Assembly: GCF_002113885.1 (NCBI RefSeq)
Contig: NW_018404943.1
Coordinates: 1,425,236-1,489,235, forward strand
Origin: Mizuhopecten yessoensis
Taxonomy: Eukaryota
Length of the DNA: 64,000 nt
Direction: 5' to 3'
Position numbers and translations under genes: made by a program
The notes under the pieces: model-generated
The model's input: the letters and a program-made list of their open reading frames with translations, nothing else
Told to the model about the DNA's origin: nothing
The model's database searches: none
Shown here: in pieces, positions 3,201 through 40,948 of the stretch
Layout of the letters: each line of letters begins with the position of its first letter
How positions within the stretch are numbered: the first letter of the stretch is position 1

Positions 3201-5546
3201 TATATGACAATGATATAACCAAATGTTCTTTATATTAAAAGTGCATGTTTATTCATAAATGTTTCAAAGATTGCACAAGAACATACATTCAGATAAATCT
3301 TATTAGATATTACATTACCTTTGGACAATGTTTTGAACTATTTGTGGTGCTATTGTAGGAGGATCATATATTTACCCTTACACAATGTTTAAACCTAACG
3401 GCGCTAGTTCCTCTATCAACACCACAACAATCAATGGCGGGGCAGTTTGTATCCAGTTCTGGTACGCGATGACTGCATCTACCTCCAATCTGGAAATCCT
3501 TGTGGATACCAATGGTCAGGAAACGTCTGTATGGCAACAGACTGGTCGTCATGGAGATGATTGGAGGAAGGCGACAATGGCCGTTTCCAGTCAGGCTCCA
3601 TTTAAGGTATATATTTATTGCAATATAATATAATATTTACATACAAGTTTGCAAAATCGAATTTTTTCTCTTGATATGCATGCGTTCTTCGCTGTATCTG
3701 AGTTACTTGAACGCATATCAAGACTTGTCTCAGCTAGCATGCATATTGCATGAAGTGCGTTAATGACATTATAATATATGCATGCTTTGTGACGTTGTTA
3801 CATGTATGACATCACAGACCGTCTTTGCAACAATGTTATGTGGTACATCCTGTGTACGTGAATTAATTCATTGTAACTTAAGGATCCCGGTTCAACTCTA
3901 GGCAAAACATTGTAGTTAGTTTAACCTAAAAAAACTCCTCTAAGTTTGTTTCGGGTATAAATGTAGCGCAACTCGGTCAGGGTTCAACCGTTGATCGATA
4001 AGCTCAGTTGGTTACAACAACAGTTTGATAATCGTGGGGTCTAGGGTTCGAATCTTTGTCAGGCACCTTAGTATAATACATATAGAGCATTGCTGTTGAT
4101 GATTTTTTATTCAATTTTAATTATTTTTCCTCTCAAAACAGGTACAGTTATCTTTTCAGAAAAGTTAATATCAGCTATTGGATTATTTTGATATACTTGT
4201 CGTGTATATTATCTGAGAACTGATATAAAATTCACATCTTTTATTTATTTTTAAATTTGTTAATTATATCATGGCGCTCTTTGTTTTTCTTTTTGTCGTT
4301 TTACTTTACTTTCTATTTCCTTTTTTTGCAGATTCGGTTCAAATGTGTAAGAAAAAATCATGACACAAAACTAGGTTTAGACGACATAAAAATATGGAAA
4401 TTTCCATCGATTACAACGACTAAGCCAACCACTACTCCCACCACGACACCAACCACGGCATCTACCACTAAACCAACCACTACATCAGCAACTACACCTA
4501 CAACTACACTCGCAACTACACCAACCAAGAAACCAACTACTACACCATCTACAACACCAATTACTACACCCACGACTACACCAACTACTACACCCACCAC
4601 TACCCCAACCACTACACTAATCACGACACCAACAACTACACAAACAACTGCACTGACCAAGACACAAATCACTACACCAACCACGACACCGACCACTACG
4701 CAAACTTCAACACCGACCACTACGCCAACCATGACTGCAACAAGGATACCAACCACTTCACAAACCATTACCCCAAACTATACGTCAACTACTACAAGGA
4801 CAACACATACGACTTCAACAAAGATAACCACATCAGTGATATCAACAACAGCACAAACAACAACACCTACAAAAGTTTCAAATAAGATATCAACAACAAT
4901 AACATCATCACTTGCAGAAATAACACCCGATGAAACAACATCAGTGAACCACATCCATAAATTTGTCCAACACACAACAGCTAAGAAAACAAAGAAACCC
5001 TCAACGAAGCCAACGACCGAACAAGTGTCAGAAATCGTATCCAAAATAAAAAATAACATAGCATCTTCAACATCATCGGAACAATCGACAACGTCACATA
5101 AAACAACAGACCAATTGTTGGAAATATCAACAACATCGGAATTCAATACAACACAATTTATGAATACGGCGTCAATACAGAATTCGTCAATTTCTGTACC
5201 TACGTCTAGAATAAAATCATCTATTCCGACTGAAACATCGCCATATCGATCAACTACTTCCGGTCACAGAATACACCATATTACTCATGGTCCTGCGGTG
5301 ACCATGACTATTCCTGTTGGCAATATTGAGAACAAAGTCGCTCAAAATGACGGGTCGTTCACCAGCAGTCACAAAACTGGGATAATCGTTGGATCCGTTA
5401 TTGGGAGTTGTGCTGTGGTTCTGGCAGCCTTAATGGTCATAAAGAAAGCCCGGGCAGCGAAAATAAAATGTTATCAACTAGAGAAATCGTATACAAGTGA
5501 TGAATACATTCCTGGATATCTTAAAATGAAAGGAATGAAAAAGTAA
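203..5546 (+). CDS. Gene A1: membrane-tethered MAM-domain mucin-like protein (signal peptide-MAM-PTS tract-TM-cytoplasmic tail), ~583 aa
   Basis: Exons 203-251, 2239-2478, 3359-3606, 4332-5546 have GT-AG junctions and compatible phases (1,1,0). The N-terminus MGKHILGWRLFYLICLGFTITTFHSTGA looks like a signal peptide. MAM motifs: CDFDSGFC, W, G-x-Y, CIQFWYAM, W..TG..G..W, IRF, LGLDDIKI. PTTT repeats follow, then TM GIIVGSVIGSCAVVLAALMVI and basic KKARAAK. AATAAA at 5567-5572. Confidence 0.85.
3998..4068 (+). mobile_element. Degenerate tRNA-derived SINE head in intron 3 of A1 (counterpart at ~38455-38522 in A2)
   Basis: A-box-like AGCTCAGTTGGTT and B-box-like GGTTCGAATC at tRNA spacing, but no intact cloverleaf stems. 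Present in both A paralogs, so it predates the duplication. Confidence 0.5.
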
Positions 5547-5729
5547 CAAGTTTAAAAGTAGTATACAATAAAACTGTTCATGCGTGTACGAAATGAAGAA
5601 CAAACAAACTGTTGCCTTGAAAAAACGATAACTCACAGATTTTGATGGGTATTTTCAGCATTTTACAGCAAGGATATTTAACGGAAACTAAAAAAGGTTA
5701 ACAATGAAAATCAGATTAAGTTGTTTTTG

Positions 5730-5823
5730 TATGAGAATTTACAATGGTGTGTTATGAACATATGAGAATGTACAATGGTGTGTTATAAACATATGAGAAT
5801 TTACAATGGTGTGTTATTAACAC
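5730..5823. repeat. 3 x 31-bp tandem repeat
   Basis: ATGAGAATTTACAATGGTGTGTTATRAACAT units start at 5731, 5762 and 5793. Confidence 0.85.
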
Positions 5824-6269
5824 AATAGATATTCAGCAAAATGGACAATCAGAACATTAAAATATAAGCTGATTTTCTGTTGTTTTGAAATTCAATGAAA
5901 CCTTTGACATGTCACTCTCGTATCAATAATATGTAAAAAGTGTTCGCAATTCCTATATACGGGAACCACTTCCTTGACAGTCATGTAGTTAGGTGATGAT
6001 ACGACATGGCTGTTATGTCAGTAGTTAATGATAAGTACGGTGTATTTGCGTACCGCGGGTGCCATATAGATGATGTGTGATGATAGTGCATCACTAGTAT
6101 TGACCATGCTAAATTGCTATTTCCTTGACAGCCATGTAGCTATATACCTGATTATAAACCATGGTTGTTATCACAATAATTATTTATAAGTATTAACCAG
6201 TATAATTTACACTAAACTTATTCATTGGAAGCTATGTAGACGATTTCTTTGTGATATAGAGCGGATTTA

Positions 6270-6885
6270 TGTTTCCATTGTAAGATAATTCAGCATTTCT
6301 ATTGTACTGCTATTTGATGTTACATTTTACGGTAATTTAACGTTTCCATCGAAGGACACTTAACGTTTCCATTGTAGGCAAATGAAACGTTTCCATTTTA
6401 CTCTAATTTAACGTTTCAATTTTACGATTATTTAACGTAAACCTTACCATTTAATGGCTTTTTAGCGTTTTCATTTTATGCAAATCAAACGTTTCCATGT
6501 TACTGTAATTAATGTTACCATTGTAAGCAGATGAAACGATTCCATTTTACTCTAATTTAACGTTTCAATTTTACGATTATTTAACTTTAACTTTTCCATT
6601 TAGTGGTTATTTAACGTTTTCATTTTATGCAAATCAAACGTTTCAATTTTACTGTAATTAACGTTTCTGCTTTACAACTATTTAACGTTTCATTTAAAGG
6701 TGGCTAAACTTATCCATTGTACTGTATTTTAACCTTTCCAATGTTAACTTGCTTTACGTTTGCATTAAGAGGCAATGACACGTTTCCGTTTACTGTAACA
6801 CACCGTTTCAATTGTAGGGTAGTCATCATTGTAAAGTAAGTCAACATGTCCTTATAGAGTAATTAAAGTTTCCAATGTAGGTAAT
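6270..6885. repeat. Degenerate ~24-bp minisatellite (core AACGTTTCCATT)
   Basis: TTAACGTTTCCATTKTA recurs at ~23-24 bp spacing, with a ~150-bp higher-order duplication (6386 vs 6535). Confidence 0.75.
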
Positions 6886-8563
6886 TTTTTTACGCAAAGT
6901 TGTTGCCAATGACACAAATCTAACTCAATGTATTCAATCTGTTGTTTATATCTTCATTGTTGTAGTAGGACTGGTAATGTGGGTGTAGTGTTATTTCTTT
7001 CGTATAAACATGACACAAAAGCATATACATGTTCAAAATAAGTACAATGTATGTACTTGTATCATGCTACATGTTACTGCTGTAATTAAGTGCTAAGTAT
7101 TATTTAGAAAGCCGATATGAAACAATTTATACAATGTCCTAAGTATTCACAGCCTTGCAGAAAATAGAATGAATATTTTTAATGTTTATGCAATCTGAAT
7201 TATACAACAGCTAACCCTGGCCCATTACTTTAAACGTCACGGTGCCGTTTGACAATTTTAATGATTCATTCTAAAATACAGGTACTTTCAATAATATAAT
7301 AACAAATATCAGAGTTGAGAATAGTTCGAAATTTATTGAAGTCATATAGCACTAATTCGAAAAGTTATATTAAGATAAAATATCCAACGGTTTTTGTCCA
7401 GATTGCAAAACAATCAGGGAGTATATTTGCGATCGTTTGGGGAATACGTTATTTATGCGATGTATGTGAATGTAATTGAAATACACGCCTTCCCATGTGA
7501 TATGGATGAAGTAAACATGTTTTTAATTTCACTAACCACTTTTGATATTGTTATAAATGTATGTGATGACCATACGACACTGACAACATTATGCTGAATG
7601 TTGTCGTTATAACTACATGAAGTTAGAAATATGGCAATCGTCTCCCTGATTCGTATTGCTAATCCTGCTAATCTTTACCGAAATTATGATAAGAGCTATC
7701 CTGCCTGCACACATGTAAAAACAAAACGTTAAATACATTTTTTTTTTTTGTATATTTCTTTACTCCGTCATAATCTACATTTTTTAATGTCATGTTCATG
7801 TAATCAAACTGTATTTAAACATTCAAACATAGTTCAATGTCGAAATTAACGTAAAACGTACATTGTAACAATAGCTAAACCAGATTGATTTGTTATATAC
7901 TGAGTACATATTTAAACAATTTCAATAAAATGCATATAATGTTATACGGAAGTAGGCGTGATTTCAAATGCCCTGATAGGATTTAGTTGGCATGTATATT
8001 TACAGGTATCATATATACTATTTTGAGATTACGGTACATTGTAGATACTTATGTGTCGTGCAAATTGGATCTAGGCACGAGGACAAATGCACAAATAAAG
8101 TCAAATATTGAATTTAAATTTCTGCAAGGGGTAAAATGACAATGAAAATAATAATGGGGCCGTGTGCTGAAACAACTCACATATGTGTCCAAAGTATATT
8201 GTATGGAACTAAATGTTATATTCCTGCTTTTTACCAGTATCATTGTTTTAGACTACGAATGTTTGTAATATAGTACTGCGGTTAGGGGTGGCGATATCAG
8301 GAGGCAGCGTTAAACTGAACTAGACGTTAAGAGATGAGATTGCTAGACAATTTTAACCAGAGACCACCGTGATCAAATGTAGCCACTTTTCTAAGTAATA
8401 AAGATAATTTAACAATCAACAAGAAAATTTAGCTTGCTTTTTATTGTTTATGTCTATACTCGTCAATTTTTTTGTTACTAATTTTAATGATATGCACTGT
8501 ACTATAATACTTGGGTGTTGGTTCATAAAGAGTAAACTGCTTAGCTTCAGATGCTTGTCTTCG

Positions 8564-9479: not shown

Positions 9480-12400
9480 ATGAAGCTGGCTTGGACTTTA
9501 GTTTTGCTACGTAAGTACAATTTATGATACGTTATTATCCATGTTCACTTTCAGTAATAATAATAACTATTATTTTTTTATTTAAAATCCTAAAGAGAGC
9601 TAGAAAAGAATATAAATATGTACCAATACATACCATGTGTAACTTTTAATTTTATGCTTGGTCAGTATCTTACAGTTAGTATTACCAGTAATATGACCTA
9701 AAACACATATTCTTAATTTGTTATTTTGTTATAAATGAGGAATGATCGACTATTGCAGACTTTCTTGTCGTAGAAATTAAATTTAAAAAGTGTAAAACAT
9801 CATAATGTTGAATATTACACATACACTGTTATCACAAAAGCATAAACAACCAAGTATTTAGTTTGGATTTTTAATGTTTATATCTTTAAGGAAGTACAAA
9901 CAGTCACCCAGGTAACAACAAAAATAACACACACCAATCAAACAATAGTTAAAATGGAAGCTTAGTTACCAGATTCATATTTCGTGGTTGTTGTTAATGA
10001 TTACGCGCGTTAGCTGTCCCAAAAGGTTTTATGTCGTAAACAGTCAATAAACAACTCTCCATGTGAACCACTGTTTTAGTTTCCAAGTCAGCCAATACAC
10101 CAGCTAATCAATTTTCAACTGTAATTCAATTCGTTAAGATTCTCACATATCATAGTTTGCAAATAACAAACTTTCAAAATCTTGAAACGCAAAATATGCC
10201 ATTCTACGAATCAATTGATGTCTATAGATACTCTAACGTAACGCAATAAAATGTGTTACAAAACACCGACATATATTACATGTACTCGATCGATTAGTAT
10301 TGGCCGATTCTTCTATTGCTTACTCAATGATGTCATGACCACGTGCAGTGGCTAGATTTCCTGAAATTCAAAACCGTAACCACAAACGTAGGTTTTGAAG
10401 CCGATTTCCTGTGTTTGCTTAATTACGTGGTGTTTAAAGGGAGCTAACCCGTCTTGACATAACGTTTTTTACTAGGACTGGTGGATAATTCTTTACACTG
10501 TTTTGCTCTAAAGAATCTTGAAATTTTGTATATTCTATATTTCCTATCTAATACATATTTTCATGTAAACGATTTATTTTGACAAAAAGAACAATCATCG
10601 TGATGTAACCACAGTTATAGAATATATATGTTATTTTAAGGATTGAGAAACATTATGATATTTAGCTTCATGAAATGGGAGCATAGGAAATACAAGAAAA
10701 ACTTGGTTCAGTGTAAATGTACTAGGTATACATGTACATGTTTCAACTAATGAAATTTCATAAGAGATGTTGAACTTACAACATTGTTCAGTTAATATAC
10801 ACTTTATATATACTGTGATTAACACACTTATGAACGTGTTTGAACTTGAATAAGTCAGTTCTATTCGCTATGACAATCACAATTGTCAATCCTGATGCCT
10901 ATGACATTTCTTTATCAAACCAGCGCCCTTAACAAAGTGAACATCTGTGTACACGTGGTATCGGGGTTTTAAGCGAGCAATCTTTATATCTTTCATATCG
11001 CAAGAAACGTATTAAAAACACTCTCAAGGCCTAAAACTCACCGAAATCAAATACCAGCAGATATGTGCATCCTCAGATAATCTCTCGACCTAATGGTATC
11101 TCTTGTAAAGTCGCGATCTGTGTTCACACTTCCTTCTCTGGGAGGCTCGAAAAACTTTATCAGTACGAATTTAGTTTCACGGGATACTATGGAATGTAAA
11201 TTCACAAAAGGATATAGAAAAGCAATGAATTAAAATGTCTGGTTTACCCTCATTCATAAGTATAAAGTATAAACAAAATTGATATCTGCCACTTATTATT
11301 CGCTAGAAAAGATTTCAATTTAAACGCATTTGAATGTATATTTAATGTACAATGCATTTATAATACAATAAAACAAGTTGTTAAAAGTCTCTCTGTATAC
11401 ATGAAGTACTGCTGGGCGAGCCAATTCGAGCGACATCGTGAAAATGTTAAAATAATAAGTTAGAAGTGATATACTGTGATAACTAAGTGATACTTTGTGT
11501 GTTGACAATGGTGAATTGTCCATCGTGGTTTTGTGTGTTGACAATGTCTAGGGTGTAGTGTGTTAACATACTTATTTTTAGTTGCAAGTTGGTTGATAAT
11601 TTCAAAAGGGTACTTTGACTCAATCCCAATTACGGAAGTGACAAACTCTGAGCAAATTTTCGCTTAAGGTCATCGGAGTGTATTGATAAACGGACTTAGG
11701 AAGTACATCCCTTGTTGAAAATCCAATGTAGGGAGACAGTATCACAATTTCCGCATATTCTAATGTTTAATATCAAACGGATGAATATTGTATGTTTATT
11801 ATTGACAGAACAGTGTGTTCTCGCAATATTAAAGTATTTCAAAGCAATCCAGGCATTAATGCAGGTTTTTATTTATCAATGAGTCACATGTGTCCATTTT
11901 TCTGTACTTTAAGAAACCGGCTACCTATTTCACTACTGTGAAGTTTTTCAAGAACGATAACTCTAACATGCAATTACTATGTGTATGGGTTTATTATAAA
12001 ATGTAAATTTTTAATCGTTTATAGATAAAAAAAAATTAATCAGTTTCAGAATTTATCAAATTGATATACATTAATGCAATACTAATCTATGGCAGTTTTT
12101 TTTTTTTGACATTATTTTGCAGACAATTGTGTCTTTAATTTTTTTTTCAAAATCCACTCCTTTTTACATAAATTTCCATTTAAAATCCTGAAAATTCCGA
12201 CAACCTATATTTTTTTGTTGCAATTTTTTTCTTTACTTCAAAGCAATATAACTACAAAATTTGAAGAAATTCTACTGAGAAATGGTGACACAAACCTACA
12301 TAAATGTCTTACCTTAAAAAGAAAGTTAAATAACATTAGTAAGGATCTTTAAGGAAAGAAATGTTATTGTATCTGCTAGGTCTGAATAAAAGTACATTAA

Positions 12401-15400
12401 TTATACATAACACGACACTTGAATTTTAAAACTGGACAATAGAAACACGTTTTTTATTTCTCAAATGCAAATCATGTTTTTAATATTTCACAGTTTTTGT
12501 CCTTGAATGTTGATAATGTGAAATACAGTCAAACCTGCTTGAGCGGTCACCTGAAATGAGCAGCCACCTCCCTAATGTGGTCAGTCTGTGGTCCGTCCGA
12601 TAGAAAAAAACTATATAATGAACCTGAAATAAGCAGCCACCTGTCTAATGCGGCCAGCGGCCACAAAACTCTGGCCCGAGACGTTATCTCCACCTTCAGC
12701 AGTCATTTTGTCCAGAAATTGACATCAAGAAAATCCCAATATATTAACAAGAACACATCCCAATAGAGCAAAGCTAATTACAATGTGTAATTAAAAACCA
12801 TAGGTAAGGTTTGACACGTTGAATTGACAAGTTGTTTACACAGCGATTTTCAGCTTGCAAATTGGGACAGGTCCTACCGACCCATCAACATTGTTTTACA
12901 AACAAAACAATAAATCCCACTTTGTGTACTCAATCAGCTTGTGATTTTTTAAAACAAGTATGATCTTTTGTGGTATCTGTACATACTGTATCCAAAGCTA
13001 CTCAGGCCTAATATATTATGTGATCAAAAAACTTGCCGCTATATTGCATGCGAAAACAGATCTGCTTCCGGTCTGCCAGTCACTATTTCTATATCAACGA
13101 AGCAGACATCATGTCAAAAGGATAAATTTCACAGCGCAGACGCTGAATCAGATTTTTGTTTTGATTAATTCGTCGTGATTTATTTCTATAATATAATAAT
13201 TTGGTTTTTAATAGCTGTGCGAGATCAGGACATTAGTGTTAGCCTTTCCATAAGGCGCGTGGGTGCTGTGAATAAACCGTTACGCTAAGTTGAAAGCTCA
13301 AAGATTCTTGCAAAGTACTAGATCTACTGAGTGATTTATTTATAAATGATGAATTAAGTTAATTATTTGATCCACATAGATCAGAATACATAGCAATGCA
13401 GATTTTCATTAAAATCAGATATACATGTAGATTTCATTACTGGTGGTTGTCTGCTAGCGCAAAACGTATGTGGAACACGTGTGTAGCCAAACAAAAATAA
13501 ATTCATCATTTCAAGAAATTAATCACCAAAACGCCTTTGTATTTCATTGATTATGCAAATTTATATTCAGGTATGAATTCGTACCCCTGTTGATGAAGGG
13601 AGAAAAATTCAAAATAACATAGCCGCCTATATTTCCGGTGAAATGTCATTATAACCCGTGGATGTATGGAAACTTGGTTGTGATTTTCGGGTGAGCCTGG
13701 TTTTAGCAGCCACCTGTCTTAAGCGGCAAATTTCTGCCGGTCCCTTGGGTGGCCTCTTAATACAGGTGTAATGTGTCCGTGCTTGGTGACACTTCACACT
13801 TTATTTTGGTTCTTTTTAATTTTTTGAATGATAATTTAATTTAATTTCTTTTATGTTTTGCAGATATCTTAACATCAGCGTGGCTATTTAGTGATGCAAG
13901 ATCAGTCGCCTCAGTTCCACCAACTAATGTCCAAGTTCTGTCTAACAGTAGTTGTTCCGATATCAATGTGAAATTACTTAGCCAGAGCTGTGACTTCAAC
14001 AGTGGTTACTGCAGCTTCAGTCACCCGACGGATTACCATGACTTACGGTGGAGGATAACATCTTCAACATATTACGCAGAAGTACATTCTCTTCATGGTA
14101 ATTTAACGTGTTATCATAAAAAAGATTTGTCTCAAAATTGGTTATTTATACAAGTTTGATTGCAATAGTATTTGTTGAGCTTATTGATGTTGAGCGATCT
14201 ATCTTTCAGAGAATTAATAACGATTTCTTTAAATTCTTATCATCAAAAATGTTTTATCTCTGAATGCAATAGAAATAACAAACATTACTTTTTCAAGCTG
14301 ATATCTCTGTTAATATTTTAAGACCTATCTGATTGTTTTTAAATTATGAAACTTATTCAGAAAAGAACTTTATATTCTTGTCCTTCTGCAGCTATTTATT
14401 GCTTCCATGGAAATATATTTACTCTCATTATTCACACTTATACGATCGACTTAATGTGACGGAGTACTATGTAATCGCCGCATAATGTATTACGATATCT
14501 CTTGTTTGACGTAGGTGTCTTTTAAATAGGTACATATTGCTTATAATCATATCACTGTAGCATAATTTTTGTATAATTACAGGAGGGTCATATATCTACC
14601 CATACATGTTGGGTAGACATGACGGCGCTAGTTCCTCTATCAACACCACAACAATCAATAGCGGGACTGTGTGTATCCAGTTCTGGTACGCCATGTCAGC
14701 ATCTACCTCCAATCTGGAAGTCCTGCTGGATACCAACGGTCAGGACACATCGCTATGGAAACTGACTGGTCGTTATGGAGATGGTTGGAGGAAGGCGACA
14801 TTGGCTGTGTTCAGTCAAAGTCCATTTAAGGTAATGATATTACATAGTAGCCAACTGCCTCACCTCCATGTGTTATAGATATCATACATATGACACGATG
14901 AAACAACATATTCATCATCATCTGCAGTAGGAACAGAAAAATGATGATATAAACCAAAAATATGGTGGCATATTTCTGCCATCCACTTGCGACTTACGAG
15001 TTACGTATGTCCACATAATTATTGAAAGATGTCAACATAATCTGAGAAGATGTCGACATATCTTTTAAATTATGTCGACAGATTATCACATTTGCCGAGA
15101 TAATTATCTCGTAAGTGGGTAACTCGGCTTTTTATCGTGTTAATGCTCGGGTGTGACATCGACTTGCCACTTACGACTTGCCAATTACGACTTATTTATG
15201 TCGACATCCTATTAGATTATTGCCGACTTACCAAAACGAGCCTTGTGCACGAGGACCGCGAAGGGGGGCTGATGGTGACTGAACAGTGGTGACTATACTG
15301 GTGAGTAACTTGGTAAAATCAATTTAAATATGGGAAATCAAAGATATGAATATTACAGTAGGTTACTATGATGTACAGAGTTTATCAATCAAAGAGGGAT

Positions 15401-18400
15401 TTTACATAAATAAGTCGTAAGTGGCAAGTCGTAAGTGGCAAGTCGTAAGTCGATGTCACACCCGAGCATTAACACGATAAAAAGCCGAGGTACCCACTTA
15501 CGAGATAATTATCTCGGCAAAATTATCTCGGCAAATGTGATAATCTGTCGACATAATTTAAAAATTATGTCGACATCTTCTTAGATTATGTCGACATCTT
15601 TCAATGATTATGTCGACATACGTAACTCGTAATTCGCAAGTGGATGGCAGAAATATGCCACCATACAAAAAGCTTCTGCTTAAATAAGATCATTAACTAT
15701 TTCTAGCGGAACGTTGTAATTAAAACAAAATGCGCTTTACAATATTATAAAAGTATTGAAATATCGGAATATGTTGGTTATGAACAGAGCATACTGTTAC
15801 AAGATAATACATATTTATATATATTATCTTATATTTCCATTTCCTTTGTACAGTCCTCATGTAAATCTACATTAATGTATCAACCAATGATTTTCCTATA
15901 ATCGAACAACAGCAAGACCCACTTAATGTTTCCAATCGGAACCTGTTCAGGTCTTACTGTCAAACTGTTTAAGGAATCGATCTCAAAATCATGACTTGGC
16001 GTGACGTACAATTCAAATTTATTCAGATTCATACAAATGTAGAAAACTCTTCGCCATATGCTTGACACTTCAATATTTTTATATCCATTATTGTGATAAT
16101 TCATGCTGATGAAAAAATAATACCGCAAAATACATACCAAAAAAGTAGAATTTTAACATTTTCTCACTTGCACTGTGTCGCCGTTCACGGACGAGATAGT
16201 AATGAATTCGAACCTGACACGTATTAAGACTCAGAAACAGTCCCTGCTGTTTTCTTCAAAGCAATGTTTAATACTCTTTTGTAATTTCGAACGAGTTCCC
16301 CTCAAAAACTGTAGATAAACTTGTTGTTATTGAAACATGCATGTCTTGTTTATCTAGTATTCCCTTTTTGTCATATTCTGGTATCTACGGAGCCTGGAAA
16401 GGGACATACAAACATTAACTGAGATTATGTTTAGTAATATGTAATCTCGGGTTATTTATCTTTTTTCCCCCACCATGTCCCATCCTAGGCTTCGTAGTAT
16501 GTAGATGTATAGACAGTAGAAAAATGAAAACATACATTTATGTTCATGTAACCAACTATATTATTACTATTTTGCAGATTCGATTCAAATCTGTAAGAAT
16601 CAACGTTCGCACAAAACTGGGATTAGATGATGTAAAGATTTGGAAATTTCCTTTCAATACGACAATATCAGCTAAAACGACGACACGAACGACAACACCG
16701 TCGCCATGGACAACACGAACAACAACAACATCGCCATGGACAACACAAACGGCATCATCAACGATAACACAAACGAGTACACCTTTGACAACAACAACAC
16801 TTTCATGGGCATATTCAACGACAACTATACCAACAACACAGAAAACACCAATGAAAACATTGAAGACAAAACATAGAATTTCACAGATCAAACCATGGGA
16901 AATGCTAACAAAAACATCAACAACAAAGCAAACGATTATTCCTGCAACAAAACCTTTTGCAACAGCCATGTCACCATGGCCAGCCTCTACGAAAATGCTA
17001 ACGACCAATCCAAGATATCCGTGGCTATCATCAACGAAACCACCAACACCAGCAAGGACAATTTCAACGGCGAAACCGTTGACAACTCAAACGATGATTA
17101 CAACAACTACACGAACCTATCAATGGACTACAGCAACACCACCATGGAGAACATCAACAACACCACCATGGGGAACATCAACGAAAACACCATGGAGAAC
17201 ATCAAGGACAACACCATGGAGAACAACGACACCACCACCATGGAGAACATCAAGGACAACACCATGGAGAACAACGACACCACCACCATGGAGAACATCA
17301 AGGACAACACCATGGAGAACAACGACACCACCACCATGGAGAACATCAAGGACAACACCATGGAGAATAGCAACAACACAACCATGGAGAACATCAACGA
17401 AAACACCATGGAGAACATCAAGGACAACACCATGGAGAATATCAACAACACAACCATGGAGAACATCAACGAAAACACCATGGAGAACATCAAGGACAAC
17501 ACCATGGAGAACAACGACACCACCACCATGGAGAACATCAAGGACAACACCATGGAGAACAACGACACCACCACCATGGAGAACATCAAGGACAACACCA
17601 TGGAGAACAACGACACCACCACCATGGAGAACATCAAGGACAACACCATGGAGAACAACGACACCACCACCATGGAGAACATCAAGGACAACACCATGGA
17701 GAATAGCAACAACACAACCATGGAGAACATCAACGAAAACACCATGGAGAACATCAAGGACAACACCATGGAGAACAACGACACCACCACCATGGAGAAC
17801 ATCAAGGACAACACCATGGAGAATAGCAACAACACAACCATGGAGAACATCAACGAAAACACCATGGAGAACATCAAGGACAACACCATGGAGAACAACG
17901 ACACCACCACCATGGAGAACATCAAGGACAACACCATGGAGAACAACGACACCACCACCATGGAGAACATCAAGGACAACACCATGGAGAATATCAACAA
18001 CACAACCATGGAGAACATGAAAGAAAACCCCATGGAGAATATCAACAACACCACCATGGAGAACATCAACACCACCCCCATGGAGAACATCAACAACACC
18101 ACCATGGAGAACGCCAACAACACCACCATGGAGAACATCAACAACACAACCATGGGGAACATCAACGAAAACACCATGGAGAACATCAAGGACAACACCA
18201 TGGAGAACAACGACACCACCACCATGGAGAACATCAAGGACAACACCATGGAGAACAACGACACCACCACCATGGAGAACATCAAGGACAACACCATGGA
18301 GAACAACGACACCACCACCATGGAGAACATCAAGGACAACACCATGGAGAATAGCAACAACACAACCATGGAGAACATCAACGAAAACACCATGGAGAAC

Positions 18401-21400
18401 ATCAACAACACCACCATGGGGAACATCAACGAAAACACCATGGAGAACATCAAGGACAACACCATGGAGAATATCAACAACACAACCATGGAGAACATCA
18501 ACGAAAACACCATGGAGAATATCAACAACACCACCATGGAGAACATCAACACCACCACAATGGAGAACATCAACAACACCACCATGGAGAACGTCAACAA
18601 CACCACCGTGGAGAACATTAACAACACCATCATTGAGAATATCAACAACACCACCATGGAGAACGTCAACAACACCACCATGGAGAACATTAACAACACC
18701 ATCATTGAGAATATCAACAACACCACCATGGAGAACATCAACACCACCACCATGGGGAACATCAACGAAAACACCATGGAGAATATCAACAAGACCACAA
18801 TGGGGAACATCAACGAAAACACCATGGAGAATATCAACAAGACCACCGTGGGGAACATCAACGAAAACACCATGGAGAACATCAACGAAAACACCATGGA
18901 GAACATCAACGAAAACACCATGGAGAACATCAACGAAAACACCATGGAGAATATCAACAAGACCACCAGGGGGAACATCAACGAAAACACCATGGAGAAT
19001 ATCAACAAGACCGCCATGGGGAACATCAACGAAAACACCATGGAGAAGATCAACACCACCACCATGGAGAACATCAACGAAAACACCATGGAGAATATCA
19101 ACAAGACCACCAGGGGGAACATCAACGAAAACACCATGGAGAACATCAACGAAAACACCATGGAGAATATCAACAAGACCACCAGGGGGAACATCAACGA
19201 AAACACCATGGAGAACATCAACACCACCACCATGGAGAACATCAACACCCCCACCATGGAGAACATCAACAACACCATCATGGGGAACATCCAACGAAAA
19301 CACCATGGAGAACATCAACAACACCACCATGGAGAACATCAACGACAACACCATGGAGAACATCAACAACACCACCATGGAGAACATCAACAACCCCACC
19401 ATGGGGAACATCAACGAAAACACCATGGAGAAGATCAACACCACCACCATGGAGAACATCAACGAAAACACCATGGAGAACATCAACGAAAACACCATGG
19501 AGAACATCAACGAAAACACCATGGAGAACATCAACAGCACCCCCATGGAGAACGTCAACAACACCACCATGGAGAACATTAACAACACCACCATTGAGAA
19601 TATCAACAACACCACCATGGAGAACATCAACGAAAACACCATGGAGAATATCAACAAGACCACAATGGGGAACATCAACGAAAACACCATGGAGAATACC
19701 AACAAGACCACCATGGAGAACATCAACGAAAACACCATGGAGAATATCAACAAAACCACCATGGAGAACGTCAACAACACCACCATGGAGAACATCAACA
19801 ACACCATCATGGGGAACATCAACGAAAACACCATGGAGAATATCAACAGAACCACCATGGAGAACGTCAACAACACCACCATGGAGAACATCAACAACAC
19901 CATCATGGAGAATATCAACAACACCACCATGGAGAACATCAACGAAAACACCATGGAGAACATCAACACCACCACCATGGAGAACATCAACACCACCACC
20001 ATGGAGATCATCAACACCACCATCATGGAGAACATCATCAAAACCATCATGGAGAATATCAACAACACCACCATGGGGAACATCAACGAAAACCCCATGG
20101 AGAACATCAACAACACCATCAACCATGGAGAACATCAACAACACGATCATGGAGAATATCAACAACCCCCCCATGGAGAACATCAACACCACCCCCATGG
20201 AGAACATCAACACCACCCCCATGGAGAACATCAACACCACCATCATGGAGAACATCAACAACACCATCAACCATGGAGAACATCAACACCACCCCCATGG
20301 AGAACATCAACAACACGATCATGGAGAATATCAACAACCCCCCCATGGAGAACATCAACAACACGATCATGGAGAATATCAACAACCCCCCCATGGAGAA
20401 CATCAACACCACCCCCATGGAGATCATCAACACCACCATCATGGGGAACATCAACGAAAACTCCATGGAGAACATCAACACCACCCCCATGGAGATCATC
20501 AACACCACCATCATGGAGAACATCAACAAAACCATCATGGAGAATATCAACACCTCCACCATGGAGAACATCAACGAAAACGCCATGGAGAACATCAACA
20601 CCACCATCATGGAGAATATCATCAAAACCATCATGGAGAATTTCAACAACACCACCCTGGGGAACATCAACGAAAACACAATGGAGAACATCAACGAAAA
20701 CGCCATGGAGAACATCAACACCACCCCCATGGAGAACATCAACACCACAACCATGGAGACCGTCAACACCACCACCATGGAGAAAATCAACAACACCATC
20801 ATGGAGAACATCAACAACACAACCATCATTGAGAATATCAACAACACCACCATGGAGACCATCAACGAAAACACCATGGAGAACATGAACACCACCACCA
20901 TGGAGAACGTCAACACAACCCCCATGGAGCACATCAACACCACCACCATGGAGAGCATCAACACCACCATCATGGAGAACGTCAACACCACCACCATGGA
21001 GATCGTAAACACCACCACCATGGAGAACGTCAACACAACCCCCATGGAGCACATCAACACCACCACCATGGGGAACACCAACAACAACACCATGGAGAAC
21101 AACGACACCACCACCATGGAGAACATCAAGGACAACACCATGGAGAACAACGACACCACCACCATGGGGAACATCAACGAAAACACCATGGAGAATATCA
21201 ACAACACCACCATGGAGAACATCAACACCACCACCATGGAGAACGTCAACACCACCACCATGGAGCACATCAACACCACCACCATGGGGAACACCAACAA
21301 CAACACCATGGAGAACAACGACACCACCACCATGGAGAACATCAACGAAAACACCATGGAGAACATCAACACCACCACCATGGAGAACGTCAACACCACC

Positions 21401-22277
21401 ACCATGGAGAACATCAACACCACCACCATGGAGAACCACAACACCACCACCATGGAGAACATCAACACCACCACCATGGAGAACATCAACAACTCCACCA
21501 TGGAAAACATTAACGACAACACCAACCAATCCACAGGCAACACCACCAACACGTGCAACAAAAACAGAAAAAACTCCTTGGAACATATCAAAGGCAATGA
21601 AAACAACGACAATACCAATACATATACAGGCAACAACAACGACAACACCAATGACAACAACAGCACTAACAGGGAAAACGACGCTACCAATAACAACACG
21701 AATTGACCAATGGCCATCATCAACAACACCACCGTGGAGAGCATCAACGAAACCAACTACAACACCAAGCAATGCAAGGGCAACACCAAAGATAACACCA
21801 ACAACGAACCAAACTATTATATTCACGACAAAACAAACGTCGAAAACAACAATGCCATGGACAACTTCAACATCATCACCAGCTACAACACACACGGCTA
21901 GACCAAAGACAACATTTAGGGATCCATGGACAACATCAACATCACCAACTACAACATGGTCGAAAACACCCATGTTAACACAACCGACAACATTTAAAAT
22001 AACATCACCGACACCCTCATGGACAACACAAACGACTAATCAACGGAGTACACCAACATCAACAACACCATCGACAGCATCAATGACAACTCCGATGTCA
22101 AAACACACAACATCAACAACACCGAAGCCACCGACGACATCTGCCTCTACGTTTGGTCTTAACCCGCAACCTTCTAACTCTGGGTTAGCGGCAACGAACC
22201 AGCAAAACGGAGCATCCGCCTCAAAAGCTCATAATACTGATATTATGTTTTTTTATTGGCGTTCTTCGTGGTCGTAA
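9480..22277 (+). CDS. Gene B1: secreted MAM-domain mucin-like protein with Trp/Arg-rich (PPWRTSTT)n tract; as assembled it stops at TGA 18018-18020 (~651 aa), while the ancestral frame ends at 22277
   Basis: Exons 9480-9510, 13864-14097, 14583-14830, 16578-(18020/22277). Signal peptide MKLAWTLVLLHILTSAWLFSDA; same MAM motifs and exon-3 size (248 nt) as the A genes. In-frame stops at 18018, 20886 and 21006; three +1 frameshifts at ~19291, ~20121 and ~20269. C-terminus HNTDIMFFYWRSSWS* matches B2. Confidence 0.8.
11668..12313. mobile_element. Non-autonomous DNA transposon with TTAA target duplication (Kolobok-like)
   Basis: TTAA|GGT...ACC|TTAA. The paralogous B2 intron has a single TTAA at 50089-50092 (empty site). 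Confidence 0.75.
12526..13768. mobile_element. Non-autonomous Tc1/mariner (pogo/Tigger-like) element with TA target duplication
   Basis: TA|CAGTCAAACCTG... left end and partly deleted right TIR ...CAGGTG|TA, with internal repeated GCAGCCACCTG motifs. Empty site GAAA-TA-ATGTGTCC at 50299-50300 in B2. Confidence 0.8.
14961..15665. mobile_element. Foldback-type MITE with ~230-bp TIRs and 6-bp TSD (IS3EU-like termini TAY..RTA)
   Basis: TATGGTGGCATATTTCTGCCATCCACTTGCG... and ...CGCAAGTGGATGGCAGAAATATGCCACCATA are inverted copies. CAAAAA is duplicated at 14955-14960 and 15666-15671. Absent from B2 intron 3 (~54375). Confidence 0.85.
16386..16496. mobile_element. Short internally deleted MITE remnant
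   Basis: Inverted ends TACGGAGCCTGGAAAGGGACAT / ATGTCCCATCCTAGGCTTCGTA. A degenerate copy sits at the same place in B2 intron 3 (~55150-55245). Confidence 0.55.
17130..21505 (+). repeat. Coding minisatellite, 24-bp unit (ACACCACCATGGAGAACATCAACA), roughly 180 copies
   Basis: CCATGGAGAAC recurs every 24 nt, with 48-bp dimeric higher-order units in 17200-18350. Confidence 0.95.
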
Positions 22278-22686
22278 ACAATCTATAAAGAGAGTAAGGA
22301 TGCCTCTTACAGTTTGTTTATAACAGAAAATCATGGATATATCATGAATATAAAATCATAAAATTGAAAAAAGTATACCAAAATACAATTTTACACTGCA
22401 ACATACATGTAATAAATATCAAAATTTGATCTGAATTTGATAGTCAGATTTCAAAGGCAATTAAAAATCATCAACACTGACAGATTTAACGTATCGCCAC
22501 CAGTGTGGATGGTATCATGTTTCAGACCGAGAATTGAGTTATTTGCCAGGGGCAGATATAACCGTGCACGTGTGATTTACATTGTATAATAGAGACTCAA
22601 CTTAAATGATTTGCTATTAATTGAATGATAGTTTTTTTTAACGATTTCGGACAATAAAATGTAAACAGCGAGAGATTAGCAACAAT

Positions 22687-27618: not shown

Positions 27619-28946
27619 TTGCTTTATATTATCGTTGAGTGTTAGTGATGCAAGATCAGTGACCTCCCCAAGAGCGACTAATGTCCACGTTTTGTCTAAC
27701 AGCAGTTGTTCTGATATCAATGTAACACTACAGAGCTGTGACTTTGATATTGTAGCTTCAGTCACCCTACGGTGTACAGTGACTTCGGTGGAAGATTACA
27801 AGTGAACTGCGAGACTCAACCGTCAATTCTCTTCACGATGGTAATTAAACGTGCTATCTTAAACAAACCCTTTGTTTCAATTTAATTTCAATAACCTTTT
27901 AAGAATATTTATTGTCATAAAAGGATCGGGGACTAAATGGTCAAAGTAAACACAACATAGATGTTACGTGATCTCAATATAGCATAAAGCAGAATAAGAT
28001 TTACTTAGAATTGTCAATGGACCTGCACAATTATTGGATATCAAGTGAGCTATACAGGCACATTTTGCCTCTTGCTAAAGTTTTAAATTGTTGTTTTGTT
28101 CACGTTATAATGTCCGTACTTTCAACATGTATATAAATTGTGTTTTTTGGCATAAACTATTTACATTTGTACTTACTTAATAAACTGCAGATCGAATGTT
28201 TTTTAAATCTGCTTCATAATGACATTTCATTATGTATTGGTCTGAGTTCAATGGGAAGACTTTTTTATATTAAACATGACTTTGATGAGATTTTAGGCTA
28301 ATTTATTTTTTAAGTTTGTTGTCAAATCATCATGACTATATGGTTTGTGTGCAAATATTTCATTTTTTTCAATAGAAACGATTTATCTTTCTTACCCAAA
28401 CAAAAAAGGTCTACGAGATGTACTGTGATACAGTGTTATCGCCTTATCATGTACAAATGAATCTCGCTAAACATTGTAAGACGTTTGTGTGTCTTTCAGA
28501 GTTTCAAGTTGATCGCTATAGCCTCTGACCTCAACATCAGCGGTCGGACGGGATGTGGTATTAGTATACATGTGGCTTACACTTCTACTCAAAATTGATA
28601 AAGTCAGGACCATAAATATAGAATCGGAACGAAATTTCATTTGTTTTTTTTAATTTACGAGTCATAAGTGACCCAACAAGGTCTAGAACGGATGTAGGTG
28701 TCCAACATTTGAAAGTTTCTTCATACAGGAATTACTTCATACATAATTTACTGTCCAGCGTTATTTTGTTGAATTTACAGGAGGATTCTATATCTACCCA
28801 TACACGACTGGTAGATATGACAGTGGTAGTACATTTCAACACCTCAACAATCAATGGCGGGGCGGTGTGTATACAGCTCTTTTACATCATGACAGCATCT
28901 ACCTCCAATGTGGAAGTCCTGGGGGATATCAATGGTCAGGACACGT
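27619..28946 (+). pseudogene. Decayed B-type MAM-mucin paralog (exon 2 and partial exon 3 only)
   Basis: Exon-2 homolog 27619-27840 (SDARSVTSPRATNVHVLSNSSCSDINVTLQSCDFD, then a frameshifting deletion). Exon-3 homolog 28781-28946 (GFYIYPYT..., frameshift, TINGGAVCIQLFYIMTASTSNVEV, truncated). Intron-1 homology at ~26480-26780. No exon 4 found. Confidence 0.85.
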
Positions 28947-40000: not shown

Positions 40001-40534
40001 ACAACTACACAAACAACTACACCAATAACTACACCTACAACTACACCAACCACTACACCAGCTACCACACCTACAACAACACCAACCACCACACCTACAA
40101 CTACAGCTACAACTACACAAACAACTACACCAATAACTACACCTACAACTACATCAACCAATACACCAACCACGACACCAACAACTACTTCAACCACTAC
40201 ACAAACAACGAAACCGACAGCGACAACGACCACGACTCCGACCACTACGGCAACCAGTACGACAACCGCTTCGCTAACCAGTAGACCAACTACTACAGGG
40301 ACGAAACGTACGACTATACAAAAGCTAACATCATCAGAGATATCAACAACAGCACAAACATCAAACTGGATAATCGTTGGATCCAGCATTGGGGGATGTG
40401 CTGTAGTTCTGGCAGCCTTAATGGTCATAATGAAAGTCAAGACGGCGAAAAGAAAAAAAAATCAACTAAGGAAATTGTATATCGGCGATGAGTTTATTTC
40501 TGAACATCTTAATATGAAAAGAATGAAAACGTAA
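31060..40534 (+). CDS. Gene A2: membrane-tethered MAM-domain mucin-like protein, ~770 aa
   Basis: Exons 31060-31108, 35119-35358, 35962-36209, 38759-40534; exons 1-3 have the same sizes as in A1 (49/240/248). Signal peptide MGTFILGWRLFYLTCLGFTISTF, MAM motifs, uninterrupted (PTTT)n tract, TM WIIVGSSIGGCAVVLAALMVIM and a basic tail. Confidence 0.87.
32052..34362. other. ~2.3-kb insertion in A2 intron 1 relative to A1 (unclassified, probably mobile DNA)
   Basis: A1 reads CTCATAAG-CTATGTTTAAACAA contiguously (~1619-1640), but in A2 the two halves lie at ~32044 and ~34366. No clear TIR or coding signature. Confidence 0.5.
37171..38334. mobile_element. Non-autonomous DNA transposon with ~37-bp TIRs in a TTAA site (Kolobok-like)
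   Basis: TTAA|AGCTGACAGTACAAGTTAAAATGGCTTTCAATCAAGA ... TCTTGATTGAAAGCTTTTTAACTTGCACTGTCAGCT|TTTA. Empty site TTAA-GGATCC at 3878-3887 in A1. Confidence 0.82.
38845..40200 (+). repeat. Coding 12-bp repeat (ACACCTACAACT; PTTT) with 108-bp higher-order units
   Basis: Visible directly; higher-order units start at 39781, 39889, 39997 and 40105. Confidence 0.9.
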
Positions 40535-40948
40535 CGACTACAAAAGTAGGATATGTTGTAAACACATTGAAAGAGAAACAACTGTTGATGAGTGTACGAA
40601 TTGAAGAACATACTAACCGTTGCATTGAAAAAAACCAGGAATTATAACATTCGTGTCAGTCATGTTCATTAAAATAAAACTGCATTAAAACATTCAAACA
40701 TATTTCAATGCCGGAACTTAACGTACAATGTATAGTTTAACAGTAGCATCAAACCAATTTTATTTGGCATATACTGAGTACATGTTTAAACAATTGGAAT
40801 AAAAGACATAAAATGTAATACAAAAGAAGAATTTCAAGTTGACAAATAAGATTAAAAACGCTTTAAGTGTTGTAATAGTATAATCTGCAAGGAATAAAAT
40901 GGCAATGAAAATAATGATTCATGAGAGAGCATTGTGCTGAAAAAAAGG

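What the first reader, a model, noticed from the sequence alone, without database searches (positions are those of the whole stretch)
17130..21505. Trp/Arg-rich cationic mucin repeat (PPWRTSTT)n
Seen: one Trp and usually one or two basic residues per 8 aa with almost no acidic residues, ~37 units before the first stop and ~180 in the full array. PW motifs are also scattered in the flanks. At one aligned flank site B2 has CCA TTG (PL) where B1 has CCA TGG (PW). Known: PTS mucin tracts are normally nearly free of aromatic residues, and Trp/Arg periodicity supports cation-pi cohesion, coacervation, carbohydrate stacking and membrane activity. Inference: a candidate self-assembling adhesive, gel-forming or antimicrobial mucin.
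Basis: partly seen in the sequence, partly recalled or inferred. Interest (0 to 1): 0.8.

Follow-up and report, generated by a model that had tools for sequence, protein, structure and literature searches.

The report
Tryptophan-rich repeat in scallop mucin-like gene
A Yesso scallop gene that is transcribed and correctly spliced encodes a secreted protein whose sugar-bearing stalk is an eight-residue repeat with one tryptophan and about one arginine per unit, a make-up absent from its three sister genes and from every other protein searched, but its function is untested and in this assembly only the first 37 of 182 repeats are translatable.

Summary
A 24-bp unit is repeated 182 times at 17134-21524. 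In one frame it reads xxPWRTSx, with Trp in 175 of 182 units and no acidic residues in the first 37.

That frame is the coding frame. The array lies in the last exon of a four-exon gene (NCBI XP_021348435, "mucin-2-like, partial", Mizuhopecten yessoensis). The gene encodes a signal peptide, one MAM domain and a Pro/Thr/Ser (PTS) stalk.

There are three limits:
- In this assembly the frame is closed by a TGA after 37 units, and further on by three frameshifts and two more stops. I could not check this stretch with reads.
- It is not a gel-forming mucin: it has no VWD or cystine-knot domains and no transmembrane segment.
- The adhesive, coacervating or antimicrobial roles are inference only.

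Three paralogues in the window (A1, A2, B2) have Trp-free stalks. Exhaustive protein searches found no other protein with this repeat. The closest analogue is the Trp-rich green-mussel coat protein Pvfp-1.

The scan had already noted this same stretch (s1-549971), but not on other DNA.

The parts
9480..9510 (+). B1 exon 1: ATG and the first 10 codons of the signal peptide (MKLAWTLVLL), followed by a gtaagt donor
   Evidence: Translation search, sequence, identical to the start of P0001
13864..14097 (+). B1 exon 2: the rest of the signal peptide and the N-terminal part of the MAM domain (SCDFNSGYCSF...)
   Evidence: GT..AG joint 14096>14582 in an RNA-run contig. P0001
14583..14830 (+). B1 exon 3: middle of the MAM domain
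   Evidence: Pfam MAM PF00629, E 8.5e-9, 35.9 bits against a cut-off of 26.4. RNA contigs lie on it
16578..16652 (+). Start of B1 exon 4: the last 25 residues of the MAM domain (IRFKSVRIN...KLGLDDVKIWKFP). This sets the reading frame of the whole exon
   Evidence: Acceptor ag at 16576-16577. Joint 14828>16576 in runs X15 and X17, and a loose end in X16. Aligns to the end of the enteropeptidase MAM domain
16653..17135 (+). 5' PTS flank, non-repeated, 161 aa, 7 Trp (5 as PW). Includes a 30-bp older repeat at 16679-16751 (TTRTTTTSPW)
   Evidence: RNA contigs 16659-17163, 16695-17137 and 16576-16950 with 0-2 mismatches
17136..18017 (+). The first 36.75 repeat units, in frame with the MAM domain. 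This is the part of the array that is translatable in this assembly
   Evidence: P0001 covers the first 10 or so units
18018..18020 (+). TGA in the PPWR frame (Ser TCA changed to TGA inside a unit that carries three substitutions)
   Evidence: Not checked against reads
18021..21524 (+). The remaining 145 units. They keep the local PWRTS register, but the frame is broken by +1 (unit at 19278), +4 (unit at 20095) and +4 (unit at 20243), and by stops at 20886-20888 and 21006-21008. This part is probably within the transcript
   Evidence: 31-mer accounting
21525..22277 (+). 3' PTS flank, 250 codons open in the same frame (9 Trp), ending ...MFFYWRSSWS and TAA. There is no transmembrane segment: the tail is a frameshifted relic of the A-type transmembrane segment

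Best explanation
The array is the coding tandem-repeat stalk in the last exon of an expressed Yesso scallop gene (B1; NCBI XP_021348435, 'mucin-2-like, partial').

The protein has a signal peptide, one MAM domain, about 160 residues of degenerate Pro/Thr/Ser sequence with scattered PW, and then (T/P/K)(T/P)PWRTS(T/R) units.

B1 is one of four tandem paralogues (A1, B1, A2, B2) that share the same MAM exons:
- The A genes end in a transmembrane segment and a cytoplasmic tail.
- The B genes lost that segment through a frameshift, so their products should be secreted.

The B1 stalk arose by repeated amplification of a PW-containing PTS unit: first an older 30-bp unit that survives in the flank, then the 24-bp unit. 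It is therefore a lineage-specific replacement of the plain TTTPT stalk kept by the paralogues.

Shown here:
- the frame;
- splicing and transcription;
- the composition;
- the absence of kin in the databases searched;
- purifying selection on the B1 MAM domain.

Inferred:
- The stalk is O-glycosylated on Thr and Ser. Both Ser4 and Thr5 of each unit have Pro at +3.
- It forms an extended polycationic rod or brush that presents the MAM domain.
- Its regular Trp and Arg let it stick to anionic glycans or surfaces, and to itself, through charge and cation-pi or CH-pi contacts.

In this assembly translation stops after 37 units. The rest of the array then lies after that stop in the message, which a secreted protein with no C-terminal anchor can tolerate.
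For: Frame:
- The MAM domain is split over exons 2-4. Its last 25 residues open exon 4 and run without a stop into the array as PPWRTSTT.
- Both non-repeat flanks (483 and 750 nt) are open only in this frame.

Expression:
- Contigs of runs X15, X16 and X17 (two studies) lie on exons 2-4 only. They are absent from the introns at 14192-14560 and 15545-16528, where DNA run X1 has contigs.
- GT..AG joints run 14096>14582 and 14828>16576.
- B1-specific flank contigs of 375-505 nt carry 0-2 mismatches.
- The RNA runs hold 0.32-0.37 of the exon's sampled words. The part up to the first stop can supply at most 0.35 of word positions (0.21 of distinct words), and DNA runs reach only 0.45. So the transcript runs beyond the TGA.

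Gene model: NCBI's model P0001 is 100% identical and uses the same frame.

Constraint: B1-lineage changes in the MAM exons are 13 synonymous against 15 non-synonymous (omega about 0.33). B1-B2 dS is 0.24 with both MAM domains intact.

Uniqueness:
- There are 0 Trp in 1012 residues of the A1, A2 and B2 stalks.
- phmmer against 1.84 billion representative proteins found only P0001 as kin. The other hits are unrelated 8-residue periodic proteins.
- Two word-index searches found nothing else.

History of the motif:
- PW recurs in the degenerate flanks (9 of 16 Trp, P about 2e-5).
- An older 30-bp SPW unit survives at 16679-16751.
Against: - A TGA at 18018, three frameshifts and two further stops break the frame in the assembly, so most of the array may not be translated.
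- Variation among units shows no third-codon-position excess in the PPWR register: 0.136, 0.101 and 0.088 for positions 1, 2 and 3. The array itself therefore gives no sign of selection on this frame.
- All three stops hit the Ser TCA codon, and they are 3 of the 7 non-consensus bases seen at that codon's middle position. That is about what random change would give.
- No orthologue with the repeat was found, so there is no evidence that Trp and Arg are conserved rather than merely tolerated.
- No protein, glycosylation, tissue or binding data exist.
- The runs are labelled RNA only as a guess, although exon-only cover and spliced joints argue strongly for RNA.
- Gene conversion among the paralogues could distort the dN/dS figures.
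Confidence: 0.6

Rival explanations
1. By-product of repeat turnover in a decaying secreted paralogue. The stalk only needs to be long and PTS-like. A unit that happened to hold PW and R was amplified by unequal crossing-over, and Trp and Arg are tolerated passengers. With the membrane anchor lost, B1 (like B2) accumulates stops and frameshifts from within the array, and most of the array is now untranslated message.
For: - Six frame-breaking changes in B1 and at least two in B2, against none in A1 and A2.
- The 28-nt variant unit occurs twice, 148 nt apart. The B2 shift occurs twice with the same local sequence. Both therefore look like real, duplicated variants rather than random errors.
- No codon-position signal in the array.
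- No relatives carry the repeat.
Against: - The B1 MAM exons are intact, with omega about 0.33 on the B1 lineage.
- The gene is transcribed and spliced.
- The 250-codon 3' flank is still open only in this frame.
- PW persists in otherwise scrambled flank units and through two generations of repeat unit.
Confidence: 0.25
2. The stops and frameshifts are artefacts of assembling a 4.4-kb array of 24-bp units, or belong to one allele. The real protein carries about 180 units and ends at 22274.
For: - The window is from GCA_002113885.2. From my own knowledge, not checked here, this is a mainly short-read assembly, which cannot order such an array reliably.
- The three indels sum to +9, so the frame is restored.
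- The 3' flank is open in the same frame for 250 codons.
- The transcript appears to span the array.
Against: - The 28-nt unit is present twice within a duplicated higher-order block.
- The TGA unit carries three substitutions, unlike a single read error.
- B2 shows the same kind of breaks.
- Read laying refuses the array itself, so nothing was tested directly.
Confidence: 0.3
3. Another register of the same DNA is the product: (MENINNTT)n or (HHHGEHQQ)n. Or the array is a non-coding minisatellite.
For: - All three registers of the unit lack stops.
- The MENINNTT register is open over 16877-19579.
- 133 of 182 units hold ACCATGG, a strong start context.
Against: - Splicing from the MAM exon fixes the PPWR register.
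- The other two registers have stops in both flanks.
- The stretch is exonic in RNA contigs.
Confidence: 0.03

Closest known systems
[quoted passage not shown]
   Same: A bivalve secreted protein made of short tandem repeats rich in Pro, Thr and a basic residue, with regularly spaced Trp. It is heavily O-glycosylated on Thr. Its Trp takes over the cohesive and adsorptive role that DOPA has in Mytilus (PMC4275877, PMC9418609, PMC8433626).
   Different: - Pvfp-1 units are decapeptides with two Trp in a W-x-x-W arrangement (from my memory of Zhao et al. 2009; that paper is not held here). B1 has one Trp per 8 residues and no W-x-x-W/C motif at all.
- Pvfp-1 has a collagen domain and no MAM domain. 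B1 is the reverse.
- There is no sequence kinship.
- Byssal location and Trp modification are unknown for B1.
Paralogues A1, A2 and B2 in the same window (single-MAM mucin-like proteins)
   Same: Same four-exon plan, MAM exons 76-79% identical in protein, and the same exon-4 start followed by a PTS array.
   Different: - Their stalks are TTTPT-type with 0 Trp in 1012 residues.
- A1 and A2 keep a transmembrane segment and a cytoplasmic tail.
- B2 uses a 15-bp unit.
Vertebrate proteins that combine MAM and mucin-like regions (zonadhesin, nephronectin) and other MAM proteins (enteropeptidase, RPTP kappa/mu, neuropilin, MDGA1)
   Same: An extracellular MAM domain. PDB matches: enteropeptidase 4e-6, RPTP kappa, neuropilin-1, MDGA1. 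Atlas structure TM 0.64. Zonadhesin and nephronectin also place a mucin-like spacer beside MAM (my own knowledge).
   Different: B1 has no VWD, EGF, CUB, Ig, FN3 or catalytic domains, only a single MAM domain. Identity is low. No orthology is shown.
Gel-forming mucins (MUC2 type), the name NCBI gave the model
   Same: A very large central exon of PTS tandem repeats.
   Different: No VWD-C8-TIL assemblies, CysD or C-terminal cystine knot. Pfam finds MAM only. The stalk is 12.6% Trp and 19% basic.
Trp/Arg/Pro-rich antimicrobial peptides (indolicidin, tritrpticin)
   Same: A Pro, Trp and Arg combination with a strong positive charge.
   Different: Those are 13-residue free peptides with 25-40% Trp and no Thr-rich glycosylation sites (my own knowledge). 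B1 is a repeat polymer with 36% Thr. Release of peptides is not shown.

Membership tests
MAM-domain proteins (Pfam PF00629) | Sequence match to the MAM profile above the curated cut-off | tested here: met
   Exon 3 alone scores 35.9 bits against a cut-off of 26.4, E 8.5e-9. P0001 carries PF00629. PDB MAM domains match at 4e-6 to 8.5e-5 over residues 31-186
MAM-domain proteins (Pfam PF00629) | MAM jelly-roll fold | tested here: met
   The ESM Atlas model of P0001 aligns to MAM domains of MAMDC2, enteropeptidase and neuropilin at TM 0.64 over residues 47-196. I made no model of my own
MAM-domain proteins (Pfam PF00629) | Extracellular location (signal peptide) | tested here: inconclusive
   The N-terminus MKLAWTLVLLHILTSAWLFSDA is hydrophobic and looks like a signal peptide. 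No predictor is available here
Mucin-like (PTS) domains | Tandem repeats dominated by Pro, Thr and Ser | tested here: met
   P+T+S is 63.6% in the 37 in-frame units. 182 tandem units
Mucin-like (PTS) domains | Near absence of aromatic and charged residues | tested here: not met
   W 12.6%, R+K 19.0%. The paralogue stalks have 0% W
Mucin-like (PTS) domains | Dense O-glycosylation | not testable with these tools
   The only support is sequence context: Ser4 and Thr5 of each unit have Pro at +3
Gel-forming mucins (MUC2 type) | N-terminal VWD-C8-TIL assemblies and a C-terminal cystine knot for polymerisation | tested here: not met
   Pfam on the exons, the flanks and P0001 finds MAM only. The 3' flank has no Cys-rich domain
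Transmembrane mucins | Transmembrane segment (and a SEA or NIDO-AMOP-VWD module) | tested here: not met
   B1 ends ...MFFYWRSSWS with no hydrophobic span. The A-type transmembrane segment is frameshifted in B1 and B2. There is no SEA hit
Pvfp-1-type Trp-based adhesive coat proteins | Repeats with a W-x-x-W/C motif, the acceptor for C-mannosylation | tested here: not met
   0 W-x-x-W/C motifs in the 480-residue open frame. Trp spacing is 8
Pvfp-1-type Trp-based adhesive coat proteins | Made in the foot gland, present in the byssus, Trp hydroxylated or mannosylated | not testable with these tools
   Run labels are coded. No proteomic data. The C. farreri byssus protein paper mentions neither MAM nor mucin
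Pvfp-1-type Trp-based adhesive coat proteins | Sequence kinship | tested here: not met
   The exhaustive phmmer search returns no mussel foot-protein-like hit. Only P0001 is kin

The most novel reading that the evidence does not exclude
B1 is a working DOPA-free 'sticky mucin'. It would be a secreted, O-glycosylated, polycationic Trp/Arg polymer that coacervates with or cross-links anionic mucus glycans, or coats surfaces and microbes. Its Trp might be modified as in Pvfp-1.

Alternatively, it could be cut at its 15 regularly spaced R-T-S-R sites into many copies of a 16-residue Pro/Trp/Arg peptide (TTPWRTTTPPPWRTSR).

Either way, the MAM head would give it a second, specific binding or oligomerising end.
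Probability: 0.15. Interest if true: 0.75.

Novelty: new variant of a known kind. Interest (0 to 1): 0.45.

Why it matters
Mucin stalks are usually treated as chemically bland sugar carriers. This one is expressed and has one Trp and about one Arg every eight residues, beside three sister genes with ordinary stalks. That makes it a natural experiment on what aromatic and cationic residues add to a glycosylated polymer.

If the residues matter, it would be a second, independent bivalve case, after green-mussel Pvfp-1, of tryptophan-based wet cohesion. It would also be a simple 8-residue template for biomaterials.

If they do not matter, the locus still shows how fast unequal crossing-over can rewrite the chemistry of a protein domain. 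It also shows how a secreted paralogue tolerates truncation inside its repeat.

Tried and rejected
- **Reads on the array.** I then laid the part beside it, as the tool advised.
- **Codon-position test.** A test of variability among the 178 units of 24 nt showed no signal of selection for any frame. Variation is dominated by amplified unit subtypes, so I dropped it as evidence.
- **Word-index protein searches.** I searched with exon 4 up to the stop, with the MAM part of P0001, and with a 193-residue piece after the stop. They found only P0001 or nothing. Even the paralogues are missing from that collection in the allowed length range, so these blanks are weak.
- **Exhaustive phmmer search.** It gave 243 hits, but on inspection they are unrelated 8-residue periodic proteins. 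The best is (TRTTPERx)n, with no Trp.
- **Literature.** There is no paper on XP_021348435. I found no link between MAM, mucin and scallop byssus. Zhao 2009 and Hwang 2012 on Pvfp-1 are not held.
- **Non-coding minisatellite and alternative registers.** I rejected these on the splicing evidence.
Full report
**What is in the sequence**

Tandem Repeats Finder reports one array at 17134-21524: period 24, 182.5 copies, 82% matches, no indels noted. Walking it unit by unit gives 182 units: 177 of 24 nt, one of 25, two of 28 and one of 27.

The consensus ACA CCA CCA TGG AGA ACA TCA ACA reads TPPWRTST. The other two registers read (N)TTMENIN and HHHGEHQQ, and neither has a stop within the unit.

In the PPWR register:
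- 175 of 182 units keep Trp and 159 keep Arg or Lys after it.
- There is one Glu in 1459 residues.

**Which frame, and what gene**

A self-comparison shows that the window holds a duplicated cassette of about 38 kb with four paralogous genes.

Blocks conserved upstream of all four genes translate into pieces of a MAM domain. Exon 3 alone passes Pfam's MAM threshold: 35.9 bits against 26.4.

The large exon of each gene begins, right after a ttttgcag acceptor, with IRFK(S/C)VR...KLGLDD(V/I)K(I/V)WK(F/L)P. This is the last strand region of MAM. In B1 it starts at 16578. From there the frame runs without a stop through 161 residues of degenerate PTS sequence into the array as PPWRTSTT. Both non-repeat flanks are open only in this frame.

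A protein search returned one database protein: XP_021348435, 'mucin-2-like, partial', from Mizuhopecten yessoensis. It is 100% identical and has a signal peptide, MAM, the PTS flank and the first ten or so units in this same frame.

The window is that same assembly, GCA_002113885.2 contig NEDP02001616.1. The old assembly is therefore not an independent check.

The MAM assignment is backed by PDB matches (enteropeptidase 4e-6, RPTP kappa, neuropilin-1, MDGA1). It is also backed by the Atlas model, TM 0.64 to MAM domains.

**Expression**

Twenty of the 23 listed public runs hold part of the exon. Three small ones (X15, X16, X17, from two studies) are flagged as probable RNA.

Laid on 13700-17370, their contigs cover exons 2, 3 and 4. 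They leave the introns at 14192-14560 and 15545-16528 empty, whereas DNA run X1 has contigs there.
- X17 carries a GT..AG joint 14096>14582.
- X15 and X17 carry the joint 14828>16576.
- X16 has a loose end at 14830 that reads the first 12 bases of exon 4.

Contigs of 505, 443 and 375 nt with 1, 2 and 0 mismatches lie on the B1-specific 5' flank and reach into the first units. So B1 is transcribed and spliced, MAM to stalk, in the PPWR frame.

Depth of array words relative to the flank is 51-112-fold in the RNA runs and 86-fold in the DNA run.

The RNA runs hold 0.32-0.37 of the sampled 31-mers. The part up to the first stop can supply at most 0.35 of positions, or 0.21 of distinct words, and DNA runs reach only 0.45. 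I infer that the message runs on past the TGA through most of the array. This is indirect.

**The breaks**

In the assembly the PPWR frame meets the following:
- TGA at 18018;
- a +1 unit at 19278;
- two identical 28-nt units at 20095 and 20243;
- TGA at 20886;
- TAA at 21006.

It is then open for the last 21 units and the 250-codon 3' flank, up to 22274.

The three indels sum to +9. All three stops are single changes of the Ser codon TCA.

The 28-nt unit occurs twice in a duplicated block, and the TGA unit carries three substitutions. That looks more like real variants than random errors. On the other hand, as far as I know an array like this cannot be assembled reliably from short reads, and read laying refuses the array.

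B2 shows two shifts with the same local sequence. A1 and A2 are unbroken.

My odds are about 65:35 that the breaks are real in the sequenced animal. If they are real, the product is a signal peptide, MAM, the flank and 37 units, about 660 residues, and the rest of the array follows the stop in the message. Because the stop is in the last exon, nonsense-mediated decay is not expected (established knowledge).

**Family context**

A1 and A2 end in a transmembrane segment and a Lys-rich tail with Tyr. In B1 and B2 the homologous DNA is read in a shifted frame and ends ...FYWRSSWS or ...FYLHSSWS. The B lineage therefore lost the anchor before B1 and B2 split, at dS 0.24.

The MAM exons are intact in all four genes. 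Pairwise omega is 0.2-0.5. B1-lineage changes are 13 synonymous against 15 non-synonymous, omega about 0.33. This fits a gene that has been under constraint, with the caveat that gene conversion among paralogues may blur it.

**How unusual is the stalk?**

The 37 in-frame units are T 35.7, P 20.1, R 17.3, W 12.6, S 7.8 and K 1.7 per cent, with no Asp or Glu and a net charge of +56. The stalks of A1, A2 and B2 have no Trp in 1012 residues.

The flanks of B1 hold 16 Trp, 9 of them as PW (P about 2e-5). A 30-bp older unit (TTRTTTTSPW) survives at 16679-16751. At one aligned site B1 has CCA TGG where B2 has CCA TTG. The PW theme is therefore older than the present 24-bp unit and has survived one round of unit replacement. 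That hints at retention but does not prove it.

Within the array, variation by codon position gives no sign of selection.

An exhaustive phmmer search of 1.84 billion representatives found only P0001 as kin. The remaining hits are unrelated 8-residue periodic proteins. Word-index searches found nothing more. No paper mentions the gene.

**Mechanism**

Shown: a secreted-type single-MAM protein gene with a Trp/Arg-periodic PTS stalk is expressed.

Inferred from general knowledge:
- Thr and Ser with Pro at +3 are good GalNAc-transferase sites, so the stalk is probably a stiff O-glycosylated rod.
- MAM domains mediate homophilic or oligomeric contacts in meprin and RPTP mu.
- Regularly spaced Arg and Trp can bind anionic glycans and give cation-pi cohesion.

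My best reading is that the stalk is a functional cationic spacer with a sticky character. I hold it at moderate confidence for the structural part and low confidence for the 'sticky' part. The main rival is that Trp and Arg are passengers of repeat turnover in a paralogue that is losing its 3' half.

**Comparison with known proteins**

The closest analogue is Pvfp-1 of Perna viridis. It is Trp-rich and O-glycosylated, and carries C-mannosyl-7-hydroxy-Trp (PMC4275877, PMC9418609, PMC8433626). But B1 lacks the W-x-x-W/C acceptor motif, has no collagen domain, and shows no sequence kinship.

It fails the defining features of gel-forming and transmembrane mucins.

I file it as a new variant of a known kind: a mucin-like tandem-repeat stalk on a MAM protein, with an unprecedented unit.

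**Earlier notes of this scan**

Notes s1-549952, s1-549978 and s1-549971 concern this same window and agree with what I derived. The scan has not reported this repeat on other DNA.

Noticed in passing
window 14657-14828 joined to 16576-16950 (run X17 contig): One RNA contig joins an exon 3 that matches paralogue B2 at all 15 listed differences to a B1 exon 4 with 0 mismatches over 375 nt. The reference B1 and B2 share only about 27 nt across this junction, so a de Bruijn chimera is not obvious. It may be a B1 allele whose MAM exon was converted by B2, which would fit highly polymorphic MAM exons.
   Followed up: partly
window 17136-18017: R-T-S-R, a minimal furin-type R-x-x-R site, recurs 15 times in the in-frame part. 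Ten times it delimits the same 16-residue piece, TTPWRTTTPPPWRTSR. The later part of the array mostly has RTST instead.
   Followed up: partly
window 16877-19579 and the whole array: 133 of 182 units contain ACCATGG, a strong start-codon context, in the +1 register that reads MENINNTT. That register is open for 901 codons. It is not linked to the MAM exons by splicing.
   Followed up: partly
window 55404-58950 (B2 array, 15-bp unit): The TTTPT frame of B2 shifts twice, at about 56180 and about 58170, each time at the same local sequence (PTKTTLTPHQRRQ). The shift is therefore part of a duplicated higher-order block. Read straight, the frame ends at 56273.
   Followed up: partly
window 22120-22330 and 58800-58960 versus 5330-5560 and 40320-40540: The C-terminus of B1 and B2 aligns to the transmembrane segment of A1 and A2 but is read in a shifted frame and stops early. 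The B genes are anchor-less derivatives.
   Followed up: yes
window 27642-27736 and 28764-28944: A fifth, broken copy of MAM exons 2 and 3, with a deletion and stops, lies between the two cassettes.
   Followed up: partly
window 14930-15670 (B1 intron 3): An inverted-repeat element (14961-15201 against 15665-15404, 88.6% identical) has a word depth of about 1000-7900 in the DNA run and also appears in RNA-run contigs. It is a high-copy transposon-like insert.
   Followed up: no
window 40949-43548: A 19-bp unit is repeated about 138 times just downstream of A2. The period is not a multiple of three, so it is presumably non-coding.
   Followed up: no
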